From the sequence record MT612989.1: a stretch of 64,000 bases of DNA; one strand, given 5' to 3'. Below the pieces are notes generated by a model. It was not told the DNA's origin and did no database searches. It worked only from the letters and a program-made list of their open reading frames with translations. Position 1 is the stretch's first letter. Each line of letters starts with the position of its first letter. The position numbers were made by a program, and so were the translations under genes. Shown here piece after piece: positions 38,880 to 52,553 of the stretch.

Positions 38880-38887
38880 TAACACAG

Positions 38888-39282: not shown

Positions 39283-39315
39283 ATGTACTCTCACTAACAA
39301 AGCGAGGTGGACAAT

Positions 39316-39471: not shown

Positions 39472-39541
39472 CTAAGGCAAATATAACTAGAGGATTTTTG
39501 GTGCTTGTGGTTAATCACAAGCACTCTCAAGAACATATTGA

Positions 39542-39663: not shown

Positions 39664-39681
39664 CAATATGTTTTTACATTG

Positions 39682-39794: not shown

Positions 39795-39804
39795 TTCAAA
39801 TTCT

Positions 39805-39929
39805 GGAGAGTTAGCTCAGTCTGGTAGAGCAAAAGAATGTTAAAGAATACTGACAAGCATTCATGCTGCAAACCTTAATAACTAGGTAAATCTTTTTGTC
39901 ACGTGGTTCAAATCCCGTACTCTCCACCA
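39805..39929 (+). ncRNA. tRNA-like RNA D with motif insert
   Basis: GGAGAGT/ACTCTCC-A-CCA, canonical D arm, AAAGA/TCTTT stem; motif G39857, CTGCAA 39866. Confidence 0.8.
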
Positions 39930-40313: not shown

Positions 40314-40391
40314 GGCCCTATAGCTCAACACGGTTAGAGCAACCGACTCATAATCGGTAGGTTACAGGTTCGAGTCCTGTTGGGGTCACCA
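40314..40391 (+). tRNA. tRNA CAT, Ile2-like (or Met)
   Basis: Cloverleaf, loop CTCATAA, GGCCC acceptor resembling ileX, CCA. Confidence 0.85.
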
Positions 40392-40411
40392 AAATAAATT
40401 GAAAAAAGTTG

Positions 40412-40440
40412 TTGACAGACGTTTCATCAACGTGTAGTAT
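40412..40440 (+). promoter_or_regulatory. Early promoter
   Basis: A tract, TTGACA-17-TAGTAT. Confidence 0.8.
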
Positions 40441-40470
40441 ACACATTATCAACTACACGAGGAAAACATT

Positions 40471-40701
40471 ATGTCACATAAATTGCTAGTTATCACATCA
40501 ATGCACGGTTGCTACGTCGATTACGATTTCAGAACTGAAATGTTTGACAGATACATGTGTGATGTTGTGATTCCGAACGACTCTGTTGTTTTGTACTCGG
40601 GTACAGTTTCAATAGATGAAATTCGAGCAGTTGCGAACGAATGTTACGCTGACATCAAGATTGAAGAAGTCAGTGATGATGTTTTTGACAGCTATCTTTA
40701 A
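40471..40701 (+). CDS. Hypothetical protein (76 aa)
   Basis: GAGG RBS, downstream of promoter. Confidence 0.75.
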   Translation: MSHKLLVITSMHGCYVDYDFRTEMFDRYMCDVVIPNDSVVLYSGTVSIDEIRAVANECYADIKIEEVSDDVFDSYL

Positions 40702-40705
40702 AAAT

Positions 40706-40945
40706 GCCGCTAACTGGCGTACAATACACAGTGTATTCCCAACATTAGTGCAGACGTAGGCTCGCAACCTACGTTGGTACCGAATCACTGGGACCGAGTA
40801 GAAAGTGCATGTGAGATGTCGAAGTCTTGTATGTAGAAATAACGCTCGGCTGCTCTGAAATGCTGATTAGCTCTTACTTCGAAACTCTAATTGGGTGGAA
40901 GAGGTGTTGTGTTTGACGTGTGTTCGATTCACACGAGCGGCGCCA
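40706..40945 (+). ncRNA. 240-nt RNA with tRNA-like ends (tmRNA-like topology)
   Basis: GCCGCT/AGCGGC acceptor, G-CCA end, T arm GTGTG-TTCGATT-CACAC, ACAATAC/GTGTTGT closing helix. Confidence 0.65.
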
Positions 40946-40958
40946 AGAGGAAATTATA

Positions 40959-41480
40959 ATGAAACCATTGAAGTTCGTTGAGGCGTTCTCTAAAGAAGAA
41001 CGTGCTGCTATGACGATTGAAGAACGTAGCAGACTTCGTAAAATATATAACGAACGCTATCAAGAGTATGTTGATAAGTACATCAATGTATTCACTCGAA
41101 AAGACTTTCGAAGAGAGCGTTGCTGGGTTATTCTTGCACGATGTAAAAAGACTGGTGAAATCATCGGTCGAATTGAAAATAGTTTTAGTATGGGATGGTC
41201 TAAAGAACGTGTTCGTGTTATTCGACCGTATCTAAACGGTAATTTCACGGGCGATGATCGCTTCTCTAAAGCTGAGTACAACAAAGCGTGTGCTGAGTAC
41301 ATAACTCATCATGAGAAACAAGTAAAGTCTCTCAGAGAAGCTTACAAAGACACTCACGACGTTTTCTTATCTCGTGTGGGTAGTAAGAACTGTCCTGTTT
41401 CTATTGATTGGGATACGTATTACAGTAAAAAAGACAAACGAAACTTTGAATATCGAAATTTGAAATTCAAAGTTAAATAA
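40959..41480 (+). CDS. Hypothetical basic protein (173 aa)
   Basis: GAGG RBS, ATG 40959. Confidence 0.75.
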   Translation: MKPLKFVEAFSKEERAAMTIEERSRLRKIYNERYQEYVDKYINVFTRKDFRRERCWVILARCKKTGEIIGRIENSFSMGWSKERVRVIRPYLNGNFTGDDRFSKAEYNKACAEYITHHEKQVKSLREAYKDTHDVFLSRVGSKNCPVSIDWDTYYSKKDKRNFEYRNLKFKVK

Positions 41481-41485
41481 TTCAT

Positions 41486-41601
41486 AGTCGGGTAGCTCAG
41501 TGGTAGAGCACGAAGAATGATACTGACAAGTATCGCTCCAGCACTCCTTCAATTGCCTGTTAAGCACGTGGTCGCTGGTTCGAATCCAGCCCCGACTACC
41601 A
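41486..41601 (+). ncRNA. tRNA-like RNA E: GTT anticodon arm interrupted by 41-nt motif insert
   Basis: AGTCGGG/CCCGACT-A-CCA; CG[insert]TGC-CTGTTAA-GCACG; motif G41530, CAGCAC 41539. Confidence 0.8.
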
Positions 41602-41627
41602 TTTTTGATAAACTAGTGAGGTATAAC

Positions 41628-41864
41628 ATGAGCGGAACATTTAATATCAACAAAACGTTACTGACTCCGAAACAATTGCGCAATCTAACAGATGAGCGTC
41701 TGAATGAATATCGCAAGTCGTTTCGTAAGCCTCTTGGGTTTTTGAAGCATCTGAACGATACAAACGAATTGACTTCAGATCAGCACAAGAAATTCGTTGA
41801 GCTTAATAAGCACTACAACGACGAAATTCTTGCTGAAATGAACAAGCGAAAACACTTAGGTTAA
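41628..41864 (+). CDS. Hypothetical protein (78 aa)
   Basis: GAGG RBS, ATG 41628; the track start lies inside RNA E. Confidence 0.7.
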   Translation: MSGTFNINKTLLTPKQLRNLTDERLNEYRKSFRKPLGFLKHLNDTNELTSDQHKKFVELNKHYNDEILAEMNKRKHLG

Positions 41865-41991
41865 TAAAATCGCAGAAAATTGATAATTTTTTTCAATTTT
41901 CTGCGAAAATACCGCAAATCGTCAGATTTAGTGTTATAAGTACTATAAAGAAACAAAACAAATTTTAATTTTTATTTCAAGAGAGCATTCA

Positions 41992-42105
41992 ATGACGCAT
42001 TCGTTTACACATTCATCTGAGACATTACGCAGCGATTTTCTGCGCTCAGAATTCGTGTATCTAGCGAATCCGATTGCGAACCAGAAGTGGGATACCCTCT
42101 TGTAG
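41992..42105 (+). CDS. Possible 37-aa peptide MTHSFTHSSETLRS...
   Basis: AGAGAG RBS-like, followed by terminator. Confidence 0.35.
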   Translation: MTHSFTHSSETLRSDFLRSEFVYLANPIANQKWDTLL

Positions 42106-42134
42106 TCCGATAGTATAACATAGAAGTATACTTG

Positions 42135-42158
42135 AGGACGCAAATAGCGTCCTTTTTT
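42135..42158 (+). terminator. Rho-independent terminator
   Basis: AGGACGC/GCGTCCT then T tract. Confidence 0.8.
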
Positions 42159-42235
42159 ATGGGCGTAAGAAAGTTAAGAAATTTTGTTTAACGTACTTTG
42201 ATTACAGAGTATGATAAACAAAGTTAAAGAACAAA

Positions 42236-42309
42236 CGGGACGTGGCGTAAAGGTAGCGTTCATGCTTTGGGAGCATGTGGTAAGAGTTCGAGTCTCTTCG
42301 TCCCGACCA
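42236..42309 (+). tRNA. tRNA-Pro(TGG)
   Basis: CATGC-TTTGGGA-GCATG, CCA. Confidence 0.92.
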
Positions 42310-42318
42310 ATTTAAAAT

Positions 42319-42395
42319 CCGTGACTAGCTCAATCTGGTAGAGTACTCCGTTTGGGGCGGAGAAGTTAAGCGTTCGAATCGCTTGTCACGGACCA
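42319..42395 (+). tRNA. tRNA-Pro(TGG), second copy
   Basis: CTCCG-TTTGGGG-CGGAG, CCA. Confidence 0.9.
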
Positions 42396-42403
42396 GTTTT
42401 AAT

Positions 42404-42479
42404 GCCCGATTAGCTCAATTGGAAGAGCAGCGCCCTACGAAGGCGAAGGTTACAAGTTCGAATCTTGTATTGGGTGCCA
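42404..42479 (+). tRNA. tRNA-Arg(ACG)
   Basis: Loop CTACGAA, CCA. Confidence 0.92.
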
Positions 42480-42682
42480 GTTAGTGTTGTTTGATTGAAG
42501 CTCGCTTTCGCACATTCCCGAAACTGCTTCTACGAATTGATACGCTTAGGACCGTATCTCGTTAAGTACTGTCGAGATGATAGAATTTAACGAACTTTTT
42601 CATAAATTAGTGTTTATGATGTCTTGAGCGAGTGTTAATATTAACACATAGAAAATGAAAACGTTAAGTTCTTCAAAATAAA

Positions 42683-42814
42683 TTCAAAAAGATGTTTACA
42701 ACGATATAAACATCGTGTACAATGAAGAAAAGCGAAACATCATTCAAAATCGAATGAAAAGTTTTTCAAAAAGATGTTTACAACGATAAAAACATCATGT
42801 ACAATGAAGAAAAG
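42683..42814 (+). promoter_or_regulatory. Duplicated 50-bp early promoter unit
   Basis: 42683-42732 and 42765-42814 differ at 2 positions; TTTACA-17-TACAAT. Confidence 0.85.
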
Positions 42815-42832
42815 AAGTTTACAAAATTTAAT

Positions 42833-42909
42833 GCGCAAGTAGCCCAATTGGCAGAGGCACTGGTCTTAGAAACCAGAAGTTAAGAGTTCGAATCTCTTCT
42901 TGCGTACCA
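42833..42909 (+). tRNA. tRNA-Leu(TAG), short variable loop
   Basis: CTGGT-CTTAGAA-ACCAG, CCA. Confidence 0.9.
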
Positions 42910-42910
42910 A

Positions 42911-42985
42911 GCACCCTTAGCTTATCAGGAAAAGCGGCGGATTGAAGTCCCGCAGTGCTCGGTTCGATTCCGAGGGGGTGCACCA
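42911..42985 (+). tRNA. tRNA-Phe(GAA)
   Basis: Loop TTGAAGT, CCA. Confidence 0.85.
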
Positions 42986-43074
42986 TATTATAGCTTGTTT
43001 GTAAGAGTTAAATCAAGCAAGGGGTTTTAGTTTTGGGTTATTTAGCAAACGCTCTTAACGTGAAAATCAAATCT

Positions 43075-43149
43075 GGGTCGTTCGTATAACGGTAGTACAT
43101 CTGGCTTTTAACCAGAACGGTGAGAGTTCGAATCTCTTGCGACCCACCA
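43075..43149 (+). tRNA. tRNA-Lys(TTT)
   Basis: TCTGG-CTTTTAA-CCAGA, CCA. Confidence 0.92.
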
Positions 43150-43160
43150 GATTTTATAAT

Positions 43161-43237
43161 GCGTCGGTAGCTCATCATGGAAGAGCAGGGAGCTTTTAAC
43201 TCTCAGGTGTCTGGTTCGAGTCCAGGGCGGCGTACCA
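43161..43237 (+). tRNA. tRNA-Lys(TTT), second copy
   Basis: GGGAG-CTTTTAA-CTCTC, CCA. Confidence 0.92.
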
Positions 43238-43300
43238 AATTAGATACATTGTGTATCGCTTTGCAAGTTAGATAGCTTGCAAATCAATATACAATTTAAT

Positions 43301-43375
43301 TCTCCCGTGGACTAACGGTAGGTCATCACCCTTTCAAGGTGAAGTGCGCGAGTTCGAATCTCGTCGGGAGAACCA
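43301..43375 (+). tRNA. tRNA-Glu(TTC)
   Basis: TCACC-CTTTCAA-GGTGA, CCA. Confidence 0.92.
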
Positions 43376-43381
43376 AATTAC

Positions 43382-43467
43382 GGAGCGTACGTCTCAAGGT
43401 GAGACAGGGGACTGTAAATCCCTGACCCTTAACGGGTAGAGAGGTTCGATTCCTCTACGCTCCACCA
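43382..43467 (+). tRNA. tRNA-Tyr(GTA)
   Basis: Loop CTGTAAA, long variable arm, CCA. Confidence 0.92.
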
Positions 43468-43471
43468 GTTT

Positions 43472-43560
43472 TAGCTTGCATACTGCAATTTAACTTAATC
43501 TATTGATCGCTCGGCGAACTCAGTTCAGACAGCGATAAACAGACCAAAGAACGCAAGCTG
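43472..43560 (+). ncRNA. Inter-tRNA RNA K with open-form CWGCA motif
   Basis: GCTTGC-ATA-CTGCAA ... GCAAGC-TG. Confidence 0.65.
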
Positions 43561-43569
43561 TTGAATAAT

Positions 43570-43646
43570 TGCGGGGTAGAGAAGTGGTCATCTCGTCGGT
43601 CTCATAAGCCGGAGAACGCTGGTTCGAATCCAGCCCCACGCAACCA
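43570..43646 (+). tRNA. tRNA-fMet-like (CAT), atypical
   Basis: fMet-like body, loop CTCATAA; GGT/GCC instead of GGG/CCC; extra nt in acceptor 3' strand. Confidence 0.8.
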
Positions 43647-43692
43647 AATTTATTTCGACTAAATATTGTTTTACGCAATAAGGAAAATTACA

Positions 43693-43935
43693 ATGAAAAC
43701 ATTTGATGAATTCATTACCGAGTCGAAAGATGTTACTTTCGGAGTTTCTGGCTCACTTTTTAGTGGTGCAATGGATAGAGAGAGACATCGAAACATGATG
43801 CAAAAACTTGGCGCTGTTAGAGACACCAAATCAAAATCACAAGATAATGTTTGGGTTGTCAGTCAAGCGAATGCTGATGCAGTTGAAGAATATCTTAGTC
43901 AGTTTGATAAGCTGATGTGGGGTAGACACAAATAA
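43693..43935 (+). CDS. Probable internal head protein (80 aa)
   Basis: N-terminus MKTFDEFITE resembles T4 capsid-targeting sequence; ACTAAATA at 43658-43665. Confidence 0.65.
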   Translation: MKTFDEFITESKDVTFGVSGSLFSGAMDRERHRNMMQKLGAVRDTKSKSQDNVWVVSQANADAVEEYLSQFDKLMWGRHK

Positions 43936-43941
43936 TTAATT

Positions 43942-44040
43942 GGAAGGCTTAGCCGAGAGATTCTGGGTAGCGGCAACGGTCTTGAAAACCGTCGGTCACC
44001 GGGAGGTGATGTTAGGGTTCGAATCCCTAGTCTTCCGCCA
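43942..44040 (+). tRNA. tRNA-Ser(TGA), enlarged D loop
   Basis: ACGGT-CTTGAAA-ACCGT, long variable arm, G-CCA. Confidence 0.9.
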
Positions 44041-44104
44041 ATTAGTTAACCGGGAAGTTTAGTCACTTAACCGATTAACACGAGCACTGAAATGTGCTCA
44101 CTTT

Positions 44105-44178
44105 AGTCCCTTAGCTCAACGGTAGAGCGTGCGACCGATAATCGCTTGGTAAGAGTTCGATTCTCTTAGGGACTACCA
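44105..44178 (+). tRNA. tRNA-Ile(GAT)
   Basis: Loop CCGATAA (C33), CCA. Confidence 0.88.
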
Positions 44179-44184
44179 GATTTT

Positions 44185-44258
44185 AGGGGCATGATGTAAA
44201 GGCAGCATGACGGATTCCAAACCCGTTCGTTAGAGTTCGAATCTCTATGCCCCTGCCA
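44185..44258 (+). tRNA. tRNA-Trp(CCA)
   Basis: Loop TTCCAAA, G-CCA. Confidence 0.9.
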
Positions 44259-44262
44259 GTTT

Positions 44263-44322
44263 AAGTAATCTTACAGCAAACAATACAAAACTTTTATTTG
44301 GAAAAAGCAAAAAGGATTACTG
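44263..44322 (+). ncRNA. Inter-tRNA RNA F with open-form motif
   Basis: AA-GTAATC-TTA-CAGCAA ... GATTAC-TG. Confidence 0.7.
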
Positions 44323-44333
44323 TTTAAATTCAA

Positions 44334-44408
44334 GGGTGTGTAACTCAGAGGCAGAGTAGTCGGCTGTTAACCGACAAGTCGAGATTTCGAAATTCTCCAC
44401 GCCCGCCA
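44334..44408 (+). tRNA. tRNA-Asn(GTT)
   Basis: GTCGG-CTGTTAA-CCGAC, G-CCA. Confidence 0.9.
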
Positions 44409-44409
44409 T

Positions 44410-44485
44410 GCTTCATTAACTCAGTTGGTAGAGTGTCTGACTGTTAATCAGAGAGTCGTTGGTTCGAGTCCAACATGAAGCGCCA
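44410..44485 (+). tRNA. tRNA-Asn(GTT), second copy
   Basis: TCTGA-CTGTTAA-TCAGA, G-CCA. Confidence 0.92.
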
Positions 44486-44553
44486 AATTCGGAGAGTCAC
44501 TACCGTTAAGTGTGAACTTGAAAAACAAAGCAACTACTTTAAGTTGTCTTTGG

Positions 44554-44629
44554 GGAGCCGAGGTGTAAGTGGTTGCATGTCTCCCTGTCACGGAGAAGGT
44601 AGCGGGTTCGAAACCCGTCGGTTCCGCCA
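44554..44629 (+). tRNA. tRNA-Asp(GTC)
   Basis: TCTCC-CTGTCAC-GGAGA, G-CCA. Confidence 0.92.
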
Positions 44630-44648
44630 AAGATAATTTAAGAACAAT

Positions 44649-44722
44649 TGGGGATTGGTGTAAAGGCAGCATAACGTACTTTGAATGCGTTGGTATCAGT
44701 TCGAATCTGTTATCCCCAGCCA
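44649..44722 (+). tRNA. tRNA-Gln(TTG)
   Basis: ACGTA-CTTTGAA-TGCGT, G-CCA. Confidence 0.9.
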
Positions 44723-44729
44723 AATACCG

Positions 44730-44845
44730 AAGAGTGTTTTCAGCAAACAATTTACTAATATTCTTATCGGAAAGAAATGTTTAGGGTTCGATTCCCTTTC
44801 AGTGTTGGTATCACTGGTCTGGACGACGCTAGTAATAACACTCAG
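44730..44845 (+). ncRNA. RNA G: motif stem at termini enclosing a T arm and closed acceptor-like hairpin (Y-RNA/YrlA-like)
   Basis: AA-GAGTGT-TTT-CAGCAA ... AGGG-TTCGATT-CCCT, TCAGTG/CACTGG ... ACACTC-AG. Confidence 0.65.
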
Positions 44846-44849
44846 TAAC

Positions 44850-44925
44850 GCCCTGATAGCACAACTGGCAGTGCAGCTCACTTGTAATGAGCAGGTTCGC
44901 GGTTCGAATCCGTGTCAGGGCACCA
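44850..44925 (+). tRNA. tRNA-Thr(TGT)
   Basis: GCTCA-CTTGTAA-TGAGC, CCA. Confidence 0.92.
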
Positions 44926-44949
44926 TTTTCAAACAACTGCGAGAATAAC

Positions 44950-45159
44950 ATGAACTATATTTCTGTATGGTGTGAATATGACATTGGTGGGGATTTCGGT
45001 GGCAACAATAACGAAGATGTTTTTTCCGTTAGTGAAGAATTATCTAATGAAGAAGTTGAAGCAAAAGTTGCTGAATATATTTCTGACATTGTTAGTGAGC
45101 CGATTGAAGAACTTGAAGGTTTATACGGTTGGGAATATATTTCAATCACACAGTTGTAA
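44950..45159 (+). CDS. Hypothetical acidic protein (69 aa)
   Basis: GAGA RBS, ATG 44950. Confidence 0.7.
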   Translation: MNYISVWCEYDIGGDFGGNNNEDVFSVSEELSNEEVEAKVAEYISDIVSEPIEELEGLYGWEYISITQL

Positions 45160-45166
45160 AAAATAT

Positions 45167-45241
45167 GGGCCGTTAGCTTAATTGGGAAAGCGCCTCACTT
45201 GCAATGAGGAAGATAGGGTTCGACTCCCTGCGTGTCCACCA
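45167..45241 (+). tRNA. tRNA-Ala(TGC), irregular acceptor stem
   Basis: CCTCA-CTTGCAA-TGAGG, G3-U70 retained, CCA. Confidence 0.8.
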
Positions 45242-45315
45242 AATTTCGAACACATGAGCGTAGACTCTCTTTACTACCATCGTCTACACTAGTTCATGGT
45301 TCGAATCTTTTCAAT

Positions 45316-45391
45316 GCGCTGTTAGCTCAATTGGAAGAGCACGTCCCTTCTAAGGATGGGGTTATGAGTTCGAATCTCATACGGCGTGCCA
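45316..45391 (+). tRNA. tRNA-Arg(TCT)
   Basis: CGTCC-CTTCTAA-GGATG, CCA. Confidence 0.92.
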
Positions 45392-45450
45392 TATTAAGCT
45401 CTTATCATGCGACGAATGATACTTTGCTTCGGCATATCACGAGCATGGTG

Positions 45451-45568
45451 AGAGAGACAATATACAGCAAACAATTGAAATTACTTAAAAGAAGTGATGA
45501 TCTTAACCTGGGCTGATTTTAACCTGAGCTTGCTTAGGCGCAGCTTGAAAGGAAAGATTCTCTCTGTC
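45451..45568 (+). ncRNA. RNA I with open-form motif (less regular stem)
   Basis: AGAGAGACAATATA-CAGCAA ... ATTCTCTCTGTC. Confidence 0.5.
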
Positions 45569-45574
45569 TAGAAA

Positions 45575-45747
45575 TAGTCAGATAGGCGCGTCGCTGAAAC
45601 AGACGATATTTGCTTGTTGAGAATCAATAAGCTAGTCAACTCCGATTTATGCAAAAGACGAAAAAACACTTCGGTATTGTCTGTACTTAATTCGTCGGAA
45701 ACGACACTGTAGCCGAAAGGCAAGTTTACTAACTTAGTTGTTAGTCG
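45575..45747 (+). ncRNA. Multi-hairpin region with GNRA loops
   Basis: GCTTGTTGA/TCAATAAGC, GTCG-GAAA-CGAC, GCC-GAAA-GGC, ACTAAC/GTTAGT. Confidence 0.45.
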
Positions 45748-45914
45748 TGATACAGGAAGTATCATGTGGTATTATTATGAACGTTTCTAGTCATCGTCAT
45801 GTAAAACAATCAAAACTAAGCAGAGGTAACAGTACCCACTATGTGGTTCCTCACTCAGACCATGAATATATGGTGTCAGCCAGTGTGCGATTAAATGAGT
45901 TAATTACTGCAATT

Positions 45915-45990
45915 GGTGATGTAGCTCAAGTGGCAGAGCAACGCTTTCATACGGCGTAAGATCCGATTTCGAGTATCGGTGTCACCTCCA
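45915..45990 (+). tRNA. Atypical tRNA with CAT anticodon
   Basis: ACGCT-TTCATAC-GGCGT, U73-CCA. Confidence 0.75.
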
Positions 45991-46010
45991 AATTCAAAAA
46001 CAAAGAGGTT

Positions 46011-46175
46011 ACGAAGCATGACTACTTTACACTAAGCAAGGGCAACATACGCGATAAAATTCGATATGTTGAAAAATGTCTCGCGAATGAGACCAACCCG
46101 TTCTTTATAAGAACACTTACTGTAGAGCTTACGAATCTACGTGCAATACGTGATTTGTTCGACGCTTCAGATTAA
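46011..46175 (+). CDS. 54-codon ORF with ACG at start position (non-canonical start or pseudogene)
   Basis: AGAGG RBS just upstream of ACG; open frame KHDYFTLSKGNIRDKIRYVEKCLANE... Confidence 0.4.
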   Translation, partial: TKHDYFTLSKGNIRDKIRYVEKCLANETNPFFIRTLTVELTNLRAIRDLFDASD

Positions 46176-46179
46176 CAAT

Positions 46180-46253
46180 GCGGGTATGATGTAATGGTAG
46201 CATGACGTCCTTCCAAGTCGTTCGTCTCGGTTCGAGTCCGTGTACCCGCTCCA
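46180..46253 (+). tRNA. tRNA-Gly(TCC)
   Basis: Loop CTTCCAA, U-CCA. Confidence 0.9.
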
Positions 46254-46259
46254 AATTTT

Positions 46260-46333
46260 GGTCCCTTAGTATAATGGCAGTACGTCTCTTTTACACAGAG
46301 AAAGAAGTGGCTCGATTCCACTAGGGACTACCA
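46260..46333 (+). tRNA. tRNA-Val(TAC)
   Basis: TCTCT-TTTACAC-AGAGA, CCA. Confidence 0.9.
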
Positions 46334-46356
46334 TTCTTTATGATGAGAAATAAATT

Positions 46357-46596
46357 ATGACGCCTGCATTACTTGAAACTCATGAATACGTAAACCACAA
46401 CCAAATCGAAAAGCTACAGCAAATGGACAGACTTATGTTTGATTGTTGGCGTGCTGGGTATAAACGTGGCAAGATTTTAGAGCTTGCATTGTCGATTGAG
46501 TCTTCAACAACCGAAGCAGACATCGAAATTTATTTCAAAAATATGTTTACAAGAGAACTATCGGCTGATAGTATCTACTTAAAGAAAACTGTATGA
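46357..46596 (+). CDS. Hypothetical protein (79 aa)
   Basis: ORF between tRNA-Val and tRNA-His, GAGA RBS. Confidence 0.7.
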   Translation: MTPALLETHEYVNHNQIEKLQQMDRLMFDCWRAGYKRGKILELALSIESSTTEADIEIYFKNMFTRELSADSIYLKKTV

Positions 46597-46747
46597 CGGA
46601 GTAGTGCTCCGACCGAATGACACACGCAAATGAGTCCGGTTGACAAACGTTATATGTCCCAAAGTATTGCAGGTAGCGACGGCGGTGTTGCTAGTAGATT
46701 TATCTATTTCTCCAAGACATAATGCAAGCTTTTAAAGTGTACTTTGG

Positions 46748-46825
46748 TGTGGCAGTGGGTGAAGTGGAAATACCCCCGGGTTGTGATTCCGGAAGATGCG
46801 GGTTCGATCCCCGTCTGTCACCCCA
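46748..46825 (+). tRNA. tRNA-His(GTG), U at -1
   Basis: CCGGG-TTGTGAT-TCCGG, C73-CCA. Confidence 0.9.
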
Positions 46826-46837
46826 AAGTACATTTAT

Positions 46838-46911
46838 GCTCGAATCGTATAATGGCAGTATGACGGATTGCAAATCCGCAGGTCAGGGTTCGATTCCCTG
46901 TTCGAGCTCCA
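46838..46911 (+). tRNA. tRNA-Cys(GCA)
   Basis: Loop TTGCAAA, U73-CCA. Confidence 0.9.
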
Positions 46912-46913
46912 AT

Positions 46914-46990
46914 GCGCACGTGGTCCAATTGGCAGAGGCATGAGGCTTAAAATCTCAGGGATGGCGGTTCGAATCCGCCCGTGCGTACCA
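46914..46990 (+). tRNA. tRNA-Leu(TAA), short variable loop
   Basis: TGAGG-CTTAAAA-TCTCA, CCA. Confidence 0.9.
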
Positions 46991-47003
46991 AATTCTAGCA
47001 TAA

Positions 47004-47095
47004 GCCGCGTTCTATACGAAGCTAGACTACCGCCGTTGAAAAACGGTCTCAGCCGAGCGAAAGCTGACAGGTGTTAGGGATTAAAGAGTCGCGGC
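47004..47095 (+). ncRNA. Structured inter-tRNA RNA
   Basis: GCCGCG/CGCGGC closing stem, CCGTT-GAAA-AACGG, TCAGC/GCTGA. Confidence 0.5.
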
Positions 47096-47106
47096 AGTTT
47101 ATTCAA

Positions 47107-47183
47107 GCCCAACTAGTCCAATTGGCAGAGGCACTAGTTTCAAACACTAGGAGTTCCGAGTTCGAATCTCGGGTTGGGCACCA
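47107..47183 (+). tRNA. tRNA-Leu(CAA), short variable loop
   Basis: CTAGT-TTCAAAC-ACTAG, CCA. Confidence 0.9.
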
Positions 47184-47279
47184 AATTCACTTAGCAACGC
47201 GAATCGAAAGAGAGTGGATAGACCTGCTAAGAGTCCCGCTAGGTCTTTAAATTATCTAAAGTGGATCTGCGAAGCGCGT

Positions 47280-47314
47280 GGCACACGTCAGCAATAAGAG
47301 CAAATATGTGTCTG
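47280..47314 (+). ncRNA. Minimal open-form motif J
   Basis: GGCACA-CGT-CAGCAA ... TGTGTC-TG. Confidence 0.55.
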
Positions 47315-47351
47315 AGCATGAGAGCAGCATGCCATTAATTGATGAGACGTT

Positions 47352-47440
47352 GGAAGCATGGTCTAAAGGTATGACAGCACCCTGCTAAGGTGTCGGACGT
47401 TAATAGCGTTCTCTGGGTTCGATTCCCAGTGCTTCCGCCA
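47352..47440 (+). tRNA. tRNA-Ser(GCT)
   Basis: GCACC-CTGCTAA-GGTGT, long variable arm, G-CCA. Confidence 0.92.
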
Positions 47441-48974: not shown

Positions 48975-49039
48975 GTGTTGACTTCCTGTTGTTAAACCTG
49001 TATCATGTATTTATCGGAAATAACTAACGAGAATTTACT

Positions 49040-49387
49040 ATGTTTGTAATGATTGATGATATGCGTGATATCGATAAGTTCACTGCGCCTGAAATTTCCG
49101 CAGATCAGAAGCTTGTTTTGCGTACGTATGAAGACGGTATGAAATTCGTCAAACATACGAATCTTACAGATATTACTTTATTCATGGACAATGATCTAGG
49201 CGGTGCTCTTGGTCATGAGGGATATGATATTCTCTCTCATGCAATTGATCATCGTAACTTCCCACGCACAGTTGTTCTAGTAACGAGTAACCCTGTTGCT
49301 CACTCTAAGATGACTATGATGTTGATGAGTACACTTCAATATAAACGTGTGGGTTCTATCTTTATGAGGCAAGATACATGCACTTAA
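49040..49387 (+). CDS. Cyclic-phosphate-processing receiver-like domain protein
   Basis: IDDMR, MDNDLG..EGYDIL, VTSNPVAHSKM pattern of that family (recognised from memory). Confidence 0.7.
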   Translation: MFVMIDDMRDIDKFTAPEISADQKLVLRTYEDGMKFVKHTNLTDITLFMDNDLGGALGHEGYDILSHAIDHRNFPRTVVLVTSNPVAHSKMTMMLMSTLQYKRVGSIFMRQDTCT

Positions 49388-49743
49388 ACGTAATTTCTGC
49401 TGCTGCAAATGCAATTAGAGTCACTTTACCAAATGGCGAAGAGAGGGATATTGTTGTTGCAGATAGCTGCCATTTTGGTCGAAACATGCAAGGCGTGTTT
49501 AAGCTATTGAAAGAACTTGGCTGTACATATGAACATCGAAGCGAACTTGGTGATCGTGGGCAGGGATTCATCAATTATTGTGGTGAATACTTCAATCGCG
49601 CTGATGCTTATGAACTCGCGAAAGAAAGCGGTCAACCATTCAATGATGGGTACACGCTACCAGATATTGACGGTGATGGTCGTCCTCGTCTCGATAGTTC
49701 ATGCATTCGACATTTTTCAAAACCAATTAAGGAATATCTATGA
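49378..49743 (+). CDS. Conserved phage hypothetical protein
   Basis: ISAAA, HFG, QGFI..GEYFNRADAYELA pattern. Confidence 0.75.
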   Translation: MHLNVISAAANAIRVTLPNGEERDIVVADSCHFGRNMQGVFKLLKELGCTYEHRSELGDRGQGFINYCGEYFNRADAYELAKESGQPFNDGYTLPDIDGDGRPRLDSSCIRHFSKPIKEYL

Positions 49744-50075
49744 GCAATCTATATGATATTTTAACTCAACGAGTCAAGCAGAATCGTTCAAAACGCGAAG
49801 AGTTGTTCGTCGTTGAAATGCGTAAATCAATTGAGCGTAAGATCGGTGGTGTTTCGGGATTTCAGTTCCCGATTACGATTCAAGTTAATCTTGAACGAAA
49901 TGAATGTTGTGATGAAATGATGACTCTCATCAAGAGTGTCATGCGACGTGAGGGATTTCACAATTTCGATGCACAGTTCGGTCATTATTCTGGCGACCCT
50001 CGTGATGTGAGAGACTATTCATATTCTTTTGTGAAATTGACAATTCGAGAAAATAAACAAGCGGGGTTTCAATGA
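49740..50075 (+). CDS. Hypothetical protein (111 aa)
   Basis: Overlapping ATGA junctions in operon. Confidence 0.7.
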   Translation: MSNLYDILTQRVKQNRSKREELFVVEMRKSIERKIGGVSGFQFPITIQVNLERNECCDEMMTLIKSVMRREGFHNFDAQFGHYSGDPRDVRDYSYSFVKLTIRENKQAGFQ

Positions 50076-50386
50076 TGCTTAGTCATGACGAACTTTCAAA
50101 ACAAATTAATCAACGAGAGCAAATAGCTCGTAAAGTTCTTAGCGAACATTATAATGGTGAATGTGAAAAAGAATTCACACATGCAGTTGAAAACGGGGCT
50201 TTTTTCCCGATTAAAATCAAAGTACCAATTCACATTAGTGATTGTGATAAGAAAGGTTCTGGTTTCATTCGTGCATTCTTCGAACAGCATGGCTACCGAA
50301 ATTTACGCACTTGCTATGAATCTGGTGGTTATGTATCTGTTGAAATATTCAAAAATGGTACGAATATCAGTCGTCATTATCGATAA
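50072..50386 (+). CDS. Hypothetical protein (104 aa)
   Basis: Overlapping ATGA junction. Confidence 0.7.
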   Translation: MMLSHDELSKQINQREQIARKVLSEHYNGECEKEFTHAVENGAFFPIKIKVPIHISDCDKKGSGFIRAFFEQHGYRNLRTCYESGGYVSVEIFKNGTNISRHYR

Positions 50387-50399
50387 ATTAAAAAAAGTG

Positions 50400-50427
50400 T
50401 TTACATGCATTAAAATTCGCGTATAAT
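50400..50427 (+). promoter_or_regulatory. Early promoter of Ro60-like gene
   Basis: A tract, GTGTTTACA..TATAAT. Confidence 0.8.
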
Positions 50428-50437
50428 CACTTCATCA

Positions 50438-50482
50438 AAGACATTTTACAGCAATTAATTATGAGGAAATGAACAATGTCAG
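50438..50482 (+). promoter_or_regulatory. Leader hairpin with CWGCA motif enclosing RBS and AUG of Ro60-like gene
   Basis: AA-GACATT-TTA-CAGCAA..GAGG..AATGTC-AG; ATG 50476 lies in the 3' strand. Confidence 0.75.
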
Positions 50483-51912
50483 TATTTATGAACGCAATGC
50501 AAACAAACGATTCACGCACAGCAAACGGTGCAGTTACTCACAGCACTTCAGGTAACGAGTGTCTAAACTTGTTCTTCGGTATTGCTGCTATGCGTGGCAA
50601 CGATCAGTCTAAAACACTGTTCGGTCGTGCGTTTGCAGAAAACCCAGAACTAGCGACTCGCATTCTTTTGTGGTCTCGTGATGTTCGAGGTGGTGCGGGT
50701 GAACGTGGTACTTTCCGTACTCTATTCACTAAACTTTGTAATGAACAGCCTGACGTAGCTCGTGCTGTAATGTCGAAAATTCCAGAACTAGGTCGTTACG
50801 ATGACTTGATTTCTGCTTTCGGTACACGTCTTGAACAAGATGCGATCACAATGTGGTCGAACGCAATTGTCAATGACAAGAATGGTCTTGCTGCGAAGTG
50901 GTTCCCACGTGAAAACAGCAAAAACGGTCATGTGTTCAAGCGCACAATCAAGTCTCTTGGCGTAACTGCGAAGCAGTGGCGTAAGATTCTGTCGCTTCTG
51001 TCTGACACTGTTGAGCAGAAGATGTGTGCGCAAAAATGGGATGCAATCGACTTCGGTAAGTTGCCTTCTGTAGCGTCTGCTCGTTATCAACAAGCATTCG
51101 GTCGTAACGCTTCAACACGTTACACAAACTACATCGAGTCACTTCAAAAAGGTGAAGCGAAGATCAACGCTGGCGCATTGTTCCCATACGATGTCGTTAA
51201 GAGCGTTAGTCACGGTAATGCGTCTGTAGCGAACGAGCAATGGAAAGCTCTGCCAAACTACATGGAAGGTTCTGATGAACGCATCATCCCTGTTGTTGAC
51301 GTGTCTGGCTCTATGAGCACGCCAATTAACGCAGGTACAGACCGTTCAGGTGTGACTTGTAAGCAAGTTGCAATGTCTCTTGGGATTTATGTTGCTGAAC
51401 GCAATGAAGGCATCTTCAAAGATCAGTTCATTTCGTTCTCAAGCGACCCGCACTTCCACCAGTTGCGCGGCTCTTCATTGAAAGAGCGTCTTGATAACAT
51501 GAATCGTTCAGGCGAAGACATGAGTACGAACATCGGTAAGTGCTTTGATGTTCTGCTAGAGCGTGCGAAGCGTGCAAATCTTTCACAAGAAGATATGCCA
51601 ACCAAGTTGCTTATCATGAGTGACATGGAATTCGATCAAGCAAACACTGGTGGTGGTTGGTACGGTCGCGGTGAACCTGCGAACTTCGATGCAATCAAAG
51701 CCAAGTACGCACGTGCTGGTTATGAAATGCCACAACTGGTCTTCTGGAACATTCGTGGTCGTCTTGGCAACGTTCCGGTTAAAGCTGGTGAAGCGGGTAC
51801 TGCACTGGTATCTGGTTGTAGCCCATCTATCTTGACTTCACTGTTGGGTGGTGAGCTTGAGCCAATCAAGATCATGATGAAAACTGTAGGCGTCGAACGC
51901 TACAGCTTTTAA
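50476..51912 (+). CDS. Ro60-like TROVE plus vWA protein (DUF2828-type)
   Basis: TANGA, RDVRGGAGER, PELGRYDDL, LAAKWFPRE; MIDAS VVDVSGSM; SDMEFD; VFWNI. Confidence 0.85.
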   Translation: MSVFMNAMQTNDSRTANGAVTHSTSGNECLNLFFGIAAMRGNDQSKTLFGRAFAENPELATRILLWSRDVRGGAGERGTFRTLFTKLCNEQPDVARAVMSKIPELGRYDDLISAFGTRLEQDAITMWSNAIVNDKNGLAAKWFPRENSKNGHVFKRTIKSLGVTAKQWRKILSLLSDTVEQKMCAQKWDAIDFGKLPSVASARYQQAFGRNASTRYTNYIESLQKGEAKINAGALFPYDVVKSVSHGNASVANEQWKALPNYMEGSDERIIPVVDVSGSMSTPINAGTDRSGVTCKQVAMSLGIYVAERNEGIFKDQFISFSSDPHFHQLRGSSLKERLDNMNRSGEDMSTNIGKCFDVLLERAKRANLSQEDMPTKLLIMSDMEFDQANTGGGWYGRGEPANFDAIKAKYARAGYEMPQLVFWNIRGRLGNVPVKAGEAGTALVSGCSPSILTSLLGGELEPIKIMMKTVGVERYSF

Positions 51913-51921
51913 ATAAGTGAT

Positions 51922-51948
51922 AAGGGCGGCATTGTGCTGCCCTTTTTT
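51922..51948 (+). terminator. Terminator after Ro60-like gene
   Basis: AAGGGCGGCA/TGCTGCCCTT then T tract. Confidence 0.8.
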
Positions 51949-51955
51949 GTAAGAG

Positions 51956-52486
51956 GTGAAAATGTTCGATTGGGAAGCGATAGAAACAGCTATCAATAAC
52001 AGTCATCCAAATAGCACAATATACGTTGGGTGTGATAGTAAGCGTAAAAGTGACATGATTAGTTACGCGACTGTGATCATAATTCATCTTGAAGGTAGTA
52101 AAGGTGCTCAAGTGTTTAAAGCAGTTGAGACTGAACCTGCATACTTATCATGTAAAGATGGTATCAGAAGTCGATTGATGAATGAAGTATACAAAGCGGG
52201 TGAAACTGCACTAATGGTTAAGCCAATGTGCGGTACTAGAGGCTTTGAAGTTCACGTTGACATCAACCCTGACCCTACACACAAATCTCACGTTGCCTAT
52301 AACGAAGCTAAAGGTACTATATTGGGATATGTTGGTCAAGAGCCCGTGTTCAAACCTGATGCGTTTGCTGCGTCTTGTGCTGCTGATTACGACGCAGTTC
52401 GAAGAGCAGATAAAATCGCTAAACGAAAAGAACTTAGACGAGCTAAACGAAAAGCAAAGAAACAAAAAACAAAAGGGCGCAAATAG
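51956..52486 (+). CDS. RNase H-like protein, YkuK family
   Basis: IYVGCDS, RLMNEV, EVHVDIN, KPDAFAASCAAD. Confidence 0.85.
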   Translation: MKMFDWEAIETAINNSHPNSTIYVGCDSKRKSDMISYATVIIIHLEGSKGAQVFKAVETEPAYLSCKDGIRSRLMNEVYKAGETALMVKPMCGTRGFEVHVDINPDPTHKSHVAYNEAKGTILGYVGQEPVFKPDAFAASCAADYDAVRRADKIAKRKELRRAKRKAKKQKTKGRK

Positions 52487-52553
52487 CGCCCTTTTTTACG
52501 GCTATACTAAATACTGTCATATATTCTAATTTCACATACATGGAATAACGCTA

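What the first reader, a model, noticed from the sequence alone, without database searches (positions are those of the whole stretch)
49040..52486. RNA repair/quality-control gene neighbourhood beside the tRNA cluster
Seen: a cyclic-phosphate receiver-like protein, the Ro60/TROVE-vWA gene and a YkuK RNase H-like gene within 3.5 kb. Known: Ro/TROVE proteins and this receiver-like family are reported near RNA repair genes, and host anticodon nucleases leave 2',3'-cyclic phosphates. Inference: a counter-defence module that heals or clears cleaved tRNAs. No RNA ligase is in this window.
Basis: partly seen in the sequence, partly recalled or inferred. Interest (0 to 1): 0.65.

Follow-up and report, generated by a model that had tools for sequence, protein, structure and literature searches.

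The report
Phage Ro60-like gene set beside tRNAs
Next to its 28 tRNA genes, this KVP40-type Vibrio phage encodes a Ro60-shaped RNA-binding ring protein, an RNase H-like nuclease and a predicted cyclic-phosphate enzyme; each gene family is found beside tRNA clusters in other phages too, but the three are not a fixed tRNA-repair unit.

Summary
The window is Vibrio phage vB_ValM_R11Z, a KVP40-like, T4-type phage. 49040-49387 is a cREC domain protein, 50476-51912 has the full Ro60 fold (HEAT/TROVE ring plus vWA with an intact MIDAS), and 51962-52486 is a YkuK RNase H-like nuclease with an invariant D-E-D-D set. Three small unknown ORFs lie between cREC and the Ro60-like gene.

- The trio occurs only in KVP40/D480-type Vibrio phages.
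- Ro60-like is in 710 phage records, YkuK in 76, and cREC in 491 (mostly T5-like, which lack Ro60-like).
- Each family recurs beside tRNA gene clusters.
- Ro60-like and YkuK lie within 6 kb of each other in about seven lineages.
- The T4-type healing and sealing enzymes (Pnkp, Rnl1, Rnl2) exist but lie about 126 kb away. There is no RtcB.

The best reading is a phage Ro60-type ribonucleoprotein, probably loaded with the phage's tRNA-shaped RNAs at 39.1-41.6 kb. YkuK would be a recurrent nuclease companion and cREC a lineage-specific addition. A Felixounavirus Ro60-like protein, inferred to be a relative, counters the Ppl defence (preprint).

This scan had already reported the Ro60-like protein and its partner RNAs on other KVP40-like DNA and on this window. 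What this report adds is the link to YkuK, cREC and tRNA clusters.

The parts
48978..49006 (+). sigma-70-like promoter match (TTGACT-17-TATCAT) in front of the cREC gene
   Evidence: Consensus scan, 10 of 12 positions. This is a consensus match only; promoter-like sites in the region are not more numerous than in shuffled sequence.
49040..49387 (+). cREC (cyclic-phosphate processing receiver-like) protein, 115 aa, single domain
   Evidence: PF20274 at E 7.5e-15, 55.8 bits. It is the only copy in the genome. D6, D7, D50, D52, T82, N84 and P85 are invariant in an alignment that includes the T5 homologue (A4).
49378..49743 (+). T4 arn.3 / Y16D-like protein of unknown function; its start overlaps the cREC stop by 10 nt
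   Evidence: phrog_839 at E 2e-29. The KVP40.0303 note reads 'similar to T4 arn.3'. ESM Atlas score 0.91 to PF26092 T4_Y16D clusters.
49740..50075 (+). small ORF of unknown function (phrog_15681), overlapping its neighbours by 4 nt
   Evidence: PHROG E 3e-71. No Pfam, NCBIfam or PADLOC match. Weak paralogue of the next ORF (E 2e-4).
50072..50386 (+). small ORF of unknown function (phrog_15675)
   Evidence: PHROG E 4e-60. No other family match.
50400..50427 (+). strong sigma-70-like promoter match (TTTACA-16-TATAAT) in front of the Ro60-like gene
   Evidence: 11 of 12 positions. The leader 50430-50495 contains UUUUACAGCAAUU but does not fold better than shuffled sequence (z 0.98).
50476..51912 (+). 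Ro60-like protein: HEAT-repeat (TROVE-type) ring plus C-terminal vWA domain, DUF2828/DUF7788 clade, 478 aa
   Evidence: Pfam and PHROG matches. AlphaFold model plus Foldseek gives Ro60 structures as the top 12 hits. The MIDAS residues D275-x-S277-x-S279, T351 and D383 are invariant in 16 homologues, as are many Arg/Lys in the ring part (A1).
51922..51944 (+). terminator-like hairpin plus T-run between the Ro60-like gene and YkuK
   Evidence: 10-bp stem with 6 G-C pairs. Sequence read.
51962..52486 (+). YkuK/DUF458 RNase H-like nuclease, 174 aa, with a strongly basic C-terminal tail
   Evidence: PF04308 at E 4e-17. D27, E77, D102 and D144 are invariant in 15 diverse homologues, numbered from the GTG-started ORF (A5). 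AlphaFold pLDDT 87.5. The best structural matches are all RNase H-superfamily nucleases, at Z 8.9-7.6.
52471..52495 (.). bidirectional terminator hairpin closing the unit, ahead of the tail-fibre gene at 52554
40314..47440 (+). cluster of 28 tRNA genes, same strand as the gene set, ending 1.6 kb upstream of cREC
   Evidence: ARAGORN and Rfam.
39160..39926 (+). four tRNA-shaped RNAs (39160-39282, 39542-39664, 39681-39795, 39805-39926) whose anticodon loop is replaced by a 40-55-nt insert; candidate partner RNAs of the Ro60-like protein
   Evidence: Rfam tRNA hits of 50-54 bits with 45-49-nt insertions. ARAGORN in intron mode. The shared hairpin plus UUCWGCA motif has compensatory changes (A2). 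Homologues lie beside Ro60-like genes in L059 and Aeh1.
41486..41601 (+). fifth tRNA-shaped RNA with the same insert module and an encoded CCA end
   Evidence: It is annotated as tRNA-Pseudo-3 in KVP40.

Best explanation
The region is an early-type, co-directional set of RNA-handling genes attached to the phage's tRNA/non-coding-RNA region. It is not a self-contained tRNA repair operon.

Its core is a Ro60-type ring protein of the DUF2828 clade. By analogy with Ro60/Rsr and Thermus phage phiLo Ro60, this protein most likely binds structured RNAs on its ring surface. The best candidates here are the phage's own tRNA-shaped RNAs with enlarged anticodon arms. Its vWA/MIDAS face would be free to hold a protein partner. 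The resulting particle would act on host or phage RNA metabolism in the phage's favour, for example by diverting a host exoribonuclease or blunting a defence, as reported for relatives.

YkuK is a metal-dependent RNase H-fold nuclease that accompanies Ro60-like genes and tRNA clusters in several phage lineages. It probably cuts or trims tRNA-cluster transcripts or RNAs presented by the Ro60-like particle.

cREC is an addition specific to this Vibrio-phage lineage. It is predicted, not shown, to open 2',3'-cyclic phosphate ends or cyclic ADP-ribose-type phosphates.

Shown here: folds, motifs, gene order and recurrence of contexts. Inferred: every binding partner, substrate and phenotype.
For: - Ro60 fold over the full length, intact MIDAS, and invariant basic residues in the ring.
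- The family is large and phage-wide: more than 7,400 homologues, 710 of 50,697 phage records, annotated 'Ro-like RNA binding protein' in mycobacteriophages.
- tRNAs lie within 10 kb in 21 of 31 fully flanked loci and within 1 kb in 8. All 322 tRNAs are on the same strand. The Felixounavirus example has 21 tRNAs starting 166 nt after the gene.
- The tRNA-shaped RNAs share a covarying hairpin plus UUCWGCA motif. Homologues lie about 500 nt downstream of the Ro60-like gene in L059 and about 2.8 kb downstream of its end in Aeh1.
- Ro60-like and YkuK are adjacent or within 6 kb in KVP40-, D480-, 1.081.O- and EniLVp02/L016-type phages, in L059, in Ci1 and in Milchi.
- YkuK is embedded in tRNA clusters in DLP_6 and RpAliso. 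It sits next to a CCA-adding enzyme in Ci1 and next to Pth in RpAliso.
- YkuK has an invariant DEDD set and the RNase H fold.
- Literature: phiLo Ro60 binds phage Y-like RNAs and host PNPase (PMC12135203). Bas63 gp130 counters Ppl. Bacterial and phage Y RNAs mimic tRNA (PMC4201824).
Against: - There are no expression or binding data. No RNA run holds the stretch, and the complex prediction could not be run.
- The protein misses Pfam's TROVE model, and no catalogued Y RNA reaches threshold. The YrlA hit at 39766-39830 is an artefact of two tandem tRNA-like genes.
- Most Ro60-like loci have neither YkuK nor cREC nearby. Their neighbours are otherwise heterogeneous: Nudix, RNase HII, DnaJ, ClpP.
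- RpAliso has YkuK without a Ro60-like gene, and T5 has cREC without one.
- The tRNA association could partly reflect a shared 'early region' location in large phages. The sampled loci are not phylogenetically independent, and I ran no matched null.
Confidence: 0.5

Rival explanations
1. One reading: a dedicated counter-defence unit for cleaved tRNAs. cREC opens the 2',3'-cyclic phosphate left by anticodon nucleases. The Ro60-like ring holds the broken tRNA. YkuK trims or clears fragments. The distant Pnkp and Rnl1 then finish the repair.
For: - The genome has the complete T4-type pathway: Pnkp with kinase and HAD phosphatase, Rnl1 with its C-terminal domain, Rnl2, and a CCA-adding-enzyme-like gene.
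- The cREC acidic pocket is conserved, and published contexts link cREC to RNA ligases (PMC7824862).
- Rnl1-like genes lie directly upstream of the Ro60-like gene in 5 of 83 loci, and a kinase plus RNA ligase lie 3.5 kb downstream in L014.
- All three families sit by tRNA clusters.
Against: - The trio is confined to one Vibrio-phage group.
- In this genome cREC is about 126 kb from the ligase and kinase.
- T4-type Pnkp already resolves cyclic-phosphate ends (established knowledge), so cREC would be redundant.
- No experiment has shown cREC activity.
- The only phenotype reported for a relative of the Ro60-like protein concerns Ppl, which that preprint proposes degrades DNA, not a tRNA nuclease.
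Confidence: 0.2
2. Neighbours by position only: three unrelated early genes with separate jobs. For example, cREC would destroy a cyclic nucleotide or ADP-ribose-derived immune signal. YkuK would be a true RNase H removing RNA:DNA hybrids at heavily transcribed or replicating DNA. The Ro60-like protein would act on its own.
For: - There are separate promoter-like sites and a terminator between the Ro60-like gene and YkuK.
- The three families have very different distributions: 710, 76 and 491 phage records.
- cREC is often fused to Nudix and placed in NAD/ADP-ribose networks.
- RNase HII lies near Ro60-like genes in 13 loci, and RNase HI lies near T5's cREC. This may simply mark replication and early regions.
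- Acb1 and NAD-salvage genes show that this phage invests in anti-signalling.
Against: - Ro60-like and YkuK are within 6 kb in about seven lineages with otherwise different neighbourhoods.
- YkuK occurs in only 76 of 50,697 records, yet 8 of the roughly 10 YkuK-bearing lineages I checked also carry a Ro60-like gene.
- YkuK sits inside tRNA arrays next to tRNA enzymes.
Confidence: 0.2
3. A tRNA maturation aid. YkuK processes the long tRNA/ncRNA precursor transcripts. The Ro60-like ring acts as a chaperone or quality gate for the phage's own tRNAs. There would be no direct role in defence.
For: - The genes are on the same strand as tRNA arrays and immediately beside them.
- YkuK lies next to a CCA-adding enzyme and a peptidyl-tRNA hydrolase.
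- Ro60 is known for binding misfolded small RNAs (PDB titles; PMC4201824).
Against: - Host RNase P, RNase Z and RNase E suffice for T4 tRNA maturation (established knowledge, not tested here).
- Most tRNA-rich phages with a Ro60-like gene lack YkuK.
- The Bas63 gp130 phenotype depends on a defence system.
Confidence: 0.1

Closest known systems
Ro60/Rsr with Y RNAs (Deinococcus Rsr-Yrn1-PNPase 'RYPER'; Salmonella rsr-yrlBA-rtcBA; mycobacteriophage Ro-like proteins with YrlA)
   Same: Full-length Ro60 fold with a vWA/MIDAS domain. Encoded on the same strand as tRNA-mimicking small RNAs and close to them. Mycobacteriophage 'Ro-like RNA binding proteins' align over the whole length at 32-34% identity.
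   Different: There is no match to Pfam TROVE; the sequence belongs to the DUF2828/DUF7788 clade. There is no RtcB or RtcA. No YrlA-type (permuted) RNA reaches threshold. The candidate partners keep the normal tRNA ends and carry the extra module in the anticodon arm. The recurrent nuclease neighbour is YkuK rather than a known link to PNPase.
Thermus phage phiLo Ro60 (PDB 9l5y; PMC12135203)
   Same: Best structural match (E 2e-8, TM 0.55). It is phage-encoded, of similar size (460 against 478 aa), and binds phage-encoded Y-like RNAs found upstream of the gene.
   Different: Only about 16% identity in the structural alignment. The phiLo RNAs are stem-bulge-stem types with a CGAA motif, not tRNA-shaped. 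Binding of host PNPase is untested for the Vibrio phage protein.
Bas63 gp130 (Felixounavirus), counter of the Ppl defence (bioRxiv 10.1101/2024.10.10.617714)
   Same: A Ro60-like protein directly upstream of the phage tRNA array. Felixounavirus homologues are 45-46% identical to the window's protein and have that same layout.
   Different: I inferred that gp130 belongs to this family from the description and from other Felixounaviruses; I did not align gp130 itself. Felixounavirus loci show no YkuK or cREC. The mechanism against Ppl is unknown.
cREC domain systems (Iyer et al. 2021 and 2022)
   Same: A standalone receiver-like domain with the conserved aspartate pocket, in a large phage rich in RNA-repair and NAD-related genes.
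   Different: Here it is not next to an RNA ligase, sirtuin, Nudix or 2H gene. It heads a small operon with T4 arn.3-like and unknown ORFs, beside the Ro60-like gene.
T4 tRNA healing and sealing (PseT/Pnkp plus RnlA) against PrrC
   Same: The phage encodes clear homologues of both enzymes and of Rnl2.
   Different: Those genes lie about 126 kb from this region and are not part of it. Nothing in 49040-52486 is homologous to them.

Membership tests
Ro60 / TROVE-vWA proteins | Ring of HEAT-type helical repeats followed by a vWA domain, over the full length | tested here: met
   AlphaFold model (pLDDT 76, pTM 0.73). The 12 best PDB matches by Foldseek are all Ro60/Rsr, at E 2e-8 to 8e-5, TM 0.46-0.59, about 510-565 aligned columns.
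Ro60 / TROVE-vWA proteins | MIDAS metal site in the vWA domain (DxSxS ... T ... D) | tested here: met
   D275, S277, S279, T351 and D383 are invariant in 16 homologues down to 52% identity.
Ro60 / TROVE-vWA proteins | Sequence match to the TROVE module (Pfam PF05731) | tested here: not met
   Pfam scan at E up to 0.1 lists DUF2828 and DUF7788 but no TROVE. A profile of the family against PDB sequences finds no Ro60. The kinship is visible by fold only.
Ro60 / TROVE-vWA proteins | A partner Y RNA encoded nearby on the same strand | tested here: inconclusive
   The only Rfam YrlA hit (32 bits against a cut-off of 69) is an artefact of tandem tRNA-like genes. Five tRNA-shaped RNAs with a shared covarying module lie 9-11 kb upstream, and their homologues lie close to the gene in L059 and Aeh1. 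Binding is untested.
Ro60 / TROVE-vWA proteins | Binding of misfolded RNA or Y RNA, and tethering of an exoribonuclease | not testable with these tools
   Needs biochemistry.
DUF2828/DUF7788 phage 'Ro-like RNA-binding protein' (PHROG 850) | End-to-end match to the family models | tested here: met
   PHROG 850 at E 1e-172 over 1-478. PF11443 at 2.7e-29 and PF25043 at 1.7e-46. 708 phage records cover at least 80% of the protein.
cREC (PF20274) | Match above Pfam's gathering score | tested here: met
   55.8 bits against 27, over residues 1-96.
cREC (PF20274) | Receiver-type acidic pocket retained (two Asp after strand 1, Asp after strand 3, Thr/Ser after strand 4) | tested here: met
   D6, D7, D50, D52 and T82 are invariant, including in the 37%-identical T5 homologue. 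Placement on the strands is inferred from the receiver pattern; the fold was not modelled.
cREC (PF20274) | Operonic link to RNA ligase or NAD/ADP-ribose-processing genes, as in the published contexts | tested here: not met
   The neighbours are arn.3-like, two unknown ORFs and the Ro60-like gene. Rnl1 and Pnkp lie at record 44.4-47.5 kb, against cREC at 173.0 kb.
cREC (PF20274) | Cyclic phosphodiesterase activity | not testable with these tools
   The activity is itself only predicted in the literature.
YkuK / DUF458 RNase H-like (PF04308) | Match above the gathering score and an RNase H-like fold | tested here: met
   62.9 bits against 25. In the model (pLDDT 87.5) the best matches are PhoExo I at Z 8.9, RNase H3 at 8.4, RNase HII at 8.1, EndoV at 7.7, and NurA and RNase H1 at 7.6. 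Foldseek alone is weak, E 2.5e-3 or worse.
YkuK / DUF458 RNase H-like (PF04308) | Carboxylate catalytic set of RNase H-type nucleases | tested here: met
   D27, E77, D102 and D144 are invariant in 15 homologues down to 30% identity and in 6 phage lineages.
Rsr-YrlA-RtcB-RtcA type RNA repair operon | RtcB ligase (and RtcA cyclase) with the Ro60 gene | tested here: not met
   No RtcB anywhere in the 246,831-bp genome.
T4-type tRNA healing and sealing pathway | Pnkp (kinase plus HAD phosphatase) and Rnl1 encoded with the region | tested here: not met
   Both are present in the genome with full domain sets, but about 126 kb away and outside the window.

The most novel reading that the evidence does not exclude
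The Ro60-like ring, loaded with a tRNA-shaped phage RNA, recruits the phage's own YkuK nuclease through its vWA/MIDAS face. This would be a fully phage-encoded counterpart of the bacterial Ro60-Y RNA-PNPase machine. It would recognise broken or decoy tRNAs, or a defence system's RNA, and destroy or mask them. cREC would prepare cyclic-phosphate ends for it.
Probability: 0.12. Interest if true: 0.8.

Novelty: new variant of a known kind. Interest (0 to 1): 0.55.

Why it matters
Phage tRNA arrays are now known to defeat tRNA-cutting defences. What the protein genes that travel with these arrays do is largely unknown.

This region brings together three such passengers. It shows that two of them, the Ro60-like ring and the YkuK nuclease, keep company across distant phages. 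That gives YkuK, a family with no known function since 2005, a concrete context: tRNA arrays and Ro60-type particles. It also gives the untested cREC prediction a tractable model phage.

If the Ro60-like particle proves to be a general counter-defence device, it would explain a gene present in about 1.4% of sequenced phages and in thousands of metagenomic ones.

Tried and rejected
- Single-sequence and profile searches of PDB sequences with the Ro60-like protein found only designed armadillo repeats. The kinship needed a fold search.
- The YrlA hit at 39766-39830 was rejected. It spans the T arm of one tRNA-like gene and the D arm of the next.
- The 2H phosphoesterase upstream of the tRNAs is Acb1 (anti-CBASS), not an RNA-end healing enzyme.
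- An RBS-sequestering hairpin in the Ro60-like leader, suggested by an earlier scan note, is not supported by folding: z 0.98, with 173 of 200 shuffles folding as well.
- Word-based homologue searches for cREC and YkuK reached only close relatives. tblastn against phages reached further.
- Unbiased clustering of neighbours of 83 Ro60-like loci gave no universal partner.
- No RNA-seq run holds the stretch.
This gives no verdict either way.
- NCBIfam and PADLOC gave nothing for any of the six proteins.
- The T4 late-promoter motif TATAAATA is absent from the region.

Full report
**Identity of the DNA.** The stretch 49000-52500 is 100% identical to Vibrio phage vB_ValM_R11Z (MT612989; window coordinate = record coordinate minus 124000). 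It is 85% identical to KVP40, so this is a T4-type Schizotequatrovirus of about 247 kb. In the public records all six genes of the region are annotated 'hypothetical', apart from 'RNA-binding protein' and 'ribonuclease with DUF458 domain' in some records.

**The observation.**
- cREC: 49040-49387 is a single-domain cREC protein (PF20274, E 7.5e-15, 55.8 bits against a cut-off of 27).
- Ro60-like: 50476-51912 matches DUF2828 plus DUF7788 and PHROG 850 end to end.
- YkuK: 51956-52486 matches PF04308 (E 4e-17).
- Between cREC and the Ro60-like gene lie three further co-directional ORFs with 4-10-nt overlaps. One is a T4 arn.3/Y16D-like protein. The other two are weak paralogues of unknown function.
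- The true YkuK start is ATG 51962, behind the Shine-Dalgarno sequence AAGAGGTG.
- Promoter-like sites precede cREC (48978-49006) and the Ro60-like gene (50400-50427, 11 of 12 consensus positions).
- A terminator-like hairpin separates the Ro60-like gene from YkuK, and a second closes the unit before the tail-fibre gene. These are consensus matches, not evidence of use.
- The 28-tRNA cluster (40314-47440) is on the same strand and ends 1.6 kb upstream.

**The Ro60-like protein.**
- Sequence methods do not connect it to Ro60. There is no Pfam TROVE hit, and PDB sequence searches find only designed armadillo repeats.
- The fold does connect it. An AlphaFold model built on 16 homologues (pLDDT 76, pTM 0.73) has Ro60 structures as its twelve best PDB matches over the whole length. 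These are Thermus phage phiLo Ro60 (9l5y, E 2e-8, TM 0.55), a 'Trove domain' entry, Deinococcus Rsr, Xenopus Ro60 and human Ro60. Isolated vWA domains follow.
- The MIDAS residues D275, S277, S279, T351 and D383 are invariant, as are many Arg/Lys in the helical part.
- The family is very large. More than 7,400 homologues were scored, at least 589 in IMG/VR, and 710 of 50,697 phage records.
- Those records include Felixounaviruses (45-46% identity), mycobacteriophages annotated 'Ro-like RNA binding protein' (32-34%), and Listeria, Staphylococcus, Enterococcus, Campylobacter and Aeromonas phages.

**YkuK.**
- D27, E77, D102 and D144 are invariant in 15 homologues down to 30% identity and in six phage lineages.
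- The model (pLDDT 87.5) matches only RNase H-superfamily nucleases at the top: PhoExo I at Z 8.9, RNase H3 at 8.4, RNase HII at 8.1, EndoV at 7.7, and NurA and RNase H1 at 7.6. Foldseek alone is weak.
- Such Z values would not be convincing on their own. Together with the Pfam match and the carboxylate set, they support an active metal-dependent nuclease.
- The C-terminal tail is strongly basic.
- No solved or characterised close relative exists.

**cREC.**
- D6, D7, D50, D52, T82, N84 and P85 are invariant, including in the T5 homologue. This fits the receiver-type acidic pocket described by Iyer et al.
- Those authors state that the domain is experimentally uncharacterised.

**Is it a module?** I tested linkage in both directions.
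- From the Ro60-like side I used 83 loci (L014-L096) with up to 10 kb of flank. Profile HMMs built here found YkuK in 4 loci (one from the same genus) and cREC only in the same genus.
- Unbiased clustering of neighbours found no universal partner. The commonest were DUF6378, DUF3008, Nudix, DnaJ, ClpP and RNase HII, each in 13-21 loci.
- Rnl1-like genes lie directly upstream in 5 loci. A kinase plus an RNA ligase lie 3.5 kb downstream in L014.
- From the YkuK side, the family is rare in phages: 76 records. Most lineages that have it also have a Ro60-like gene close by.
  - The two genes are adjacent in KVP40-, D480-, 1.081.O- and EniLVp02/L016-type phages.
  - They are 4-4.3 kb apart in L059, in Citrobacter phage Ci1 (where the 466-aa gene is 51% identical) and in Pseudomonas phage Milchi.
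  - They are 12.6 kb apart in DLP_6.
  - RpAliso has YkuK without a Ro60-like gene.
- cREC by tblastn is in 491 records, mostly T5-like. T5 has no Ro60-like gene.
- The trio is therefore lineage-specific, the Ro60-like/YkuK pair is recurrent, and the cREC/Ro60-like pair is not.

**The common denominator is the tRNA array.**
- Among 31 Ro60-like loci with full flanks (same genus excluded), 21 have tRNAs within 10 kb, 10 within 3 kb and 8 within 1 kb. All 322 tRNAs found are on the gene's strand.
- In Felixounavirus 'skuden', 21 tRNAs start 166 nt after the gene.
- YkuK is embedded in the arrays of DLP_6 and RpAliso, where it sits beside peptidyl-tRNA hydrolase. In Ci1 it lies next to a CCA-adding enzyme.
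- T5's cREC homologue lies 1.3 kb from T5's tRNA region.
- I did not compute a matched null. My rough estimate is that a random gene in a 150-250-kb phage lies within 10 kb of the array about 10-15% of the time. The loci are not independent lineages, so this is strong circumstantial evidence, not a statistical result.

**Candidate partner RNAs.**
- Upstream of and within the array lie five tRNA-shaped RNAs: 39160-39282, 39542-39664, 39681-39795, 39805-39926 and 41486-41601. Each has acceptor, D and T arms, but a 40-55-nt insert replaces the anticodon loop. KVP40 annotates three of them as pseudo-tRNAs.
- They share a 5-7-bp hairpin with compensatory changes and a following UUCWGCA motif.
- Clear homologues lie about 500 nt downstream of the Ro60-like gene in L059 and about 2.8 kb downstream of its end in Aeromonas phage Aeh1. 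A 114-nt pseudo-tRNA lies 600 nt downstream of the Ro60-like gene in Ci1.
- Bacterial Y RNAs mimic tRNA (PMC4201824). These RNAs would be a non-permuted version of that design.
- Earlier reports of this scan reached the same reading on other KVP40-like DNA and on this window. I saw the motif before reading those notes, but my result is not independent proof of binding.

**The rest of the genome.**
- MT612989 encodes Rnl1 (with the T4 Rnl1 C-terminal domain), Pnkp (kinase plus HAD phosphatase) 2 kb from it, Rnl2, and a CCA-adding-enzyme-like gene.
- There is no RtcB, no Tpt1/KptA and no second cREC.
- The 2H protein flanking the array on the other side is Acb1.
- The classical T4 repair route is therefore present, but about 126 kb from the region.

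**Literature.**
- phiLo Ro60 binds two phage Y-like RNAs and host PNPase, and attenuates PNPase (PMC12135203).
- Bas63 gp130 is Ro60-like and lies directly upstream of that phage's tRNAs. It counters the Ppl defence in deletion and complementation tests (bioRxiv 10.1101/2024.10.10.617714). I inferred from the Felixounavirus homologues that it belongs to this family; I did not align gp130 itself.
- Iyer et al. list ROT/TROVE proteins and cREC among jumbo-phage RNA-repair components.
- A recent Schizotequatrovirus study lists Acb1, NARP2 and AcrIIA7 as counter-defences. In the passages I searched it does not discuss this region.

**Verdict.** The most likely mechanism is a phage Ro60-type particle with tRNA-shaped RNAs. 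YkuK would be a recurrent nuclease companion and cREC a lineage-specific addition.

**What could not be done.** No expression data exist, because no RNA run holds the stretch.

Noticed in passing
window 38039-38494: An Acb1 anti-CBASS 2H phosphodiesterase (PF23474, E 8e-46), the homologue of T4 57B. It lies just after dNMP kinase and before the ncRNA/tRNA region. KVP40's RefSeq record calls it 'RNA ligase'.
   Followed up: partly
window ~38757-38880: Two near-identical strong sigma-70-like promoters in tandem (TTGACTTA ... TAGAAT and TTGACTTA ... TAAGAT) head the non-coding RNA/tRNA region. Seen by eye.
   Followed up: no
window 48287-48331: An isolated tRNA acceptor-stem plus T-arm 'minihelix' (GGGAGAU ... 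GGUUCGAUUCC ... GUCUCCC) between two small ORFs, 0.7 kb upstream of cREC. ARAGORN in relaxed intron mode calls 48176-48330 a tRNA with a 69-nt insert.
   Followed up: partly
window 44265-44322: A sub-threshold Rfam match to Dictyostelium Class I RNA (RF01414, 31.8 bits against a cut-off of 41.5, E 0.01) in a spacer between tRNA genes. Earlier scan notes link this RNA class to the Ro60-like partner RNAs.
   Followed up: no
window 49040-49387 (residues 39-93): cREC shows a weak sequence similarity (E 0.014) to the N-terminal part of UG15 defence-associated reverse transcriptases with solved structures (21ou, 9vdo, 9ltm). This is a possible cREC-like domain in a defence protein.
   Followed up: no
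L098 (Citrobacter phage Ci1) 576-8785: Within 8 kb, all on one strand: a Ro60-like gene, a 114-nt pseudo-tRNA, tRNA-Ser, thymidine kinase, YkuK, a CCA-adding enzyme, and a NadM/ADP-ribose pyrophosphatase.
   Followed up: partly
L021, L048, L050, L054, L084; L014 12890-14555: In five metagenomic phage loci an Rnl1-like RNA ligase lies directly upstream of the Ro60-like gene. In L014 an AAA_33 kinase and an Rnl2-type ligase lie 3.5 kb downstream of it.
   Followed up: partly
L044, L047, L053, L082 (3.4-3.9 kb after the Ro60-like gene start in L044, L047 and L053; 2.3 kb in L082): A second kind of enlarged tRNA-like gene, with a type-II-like D arm (GGCGGAAUUGGUAGACGC) and 30-73-nt inserts. It recurs inside the tRNA arrays next to Ro60-like genes of another phage group.
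   Followed up: no
MT612989 record 118190-118591 (5.4 kb before the window start): A CCA-adding-enzyme/poly(A)-polymerase family gene (PF01743, E 4.5e-17) in this phage.
   Followed up: no
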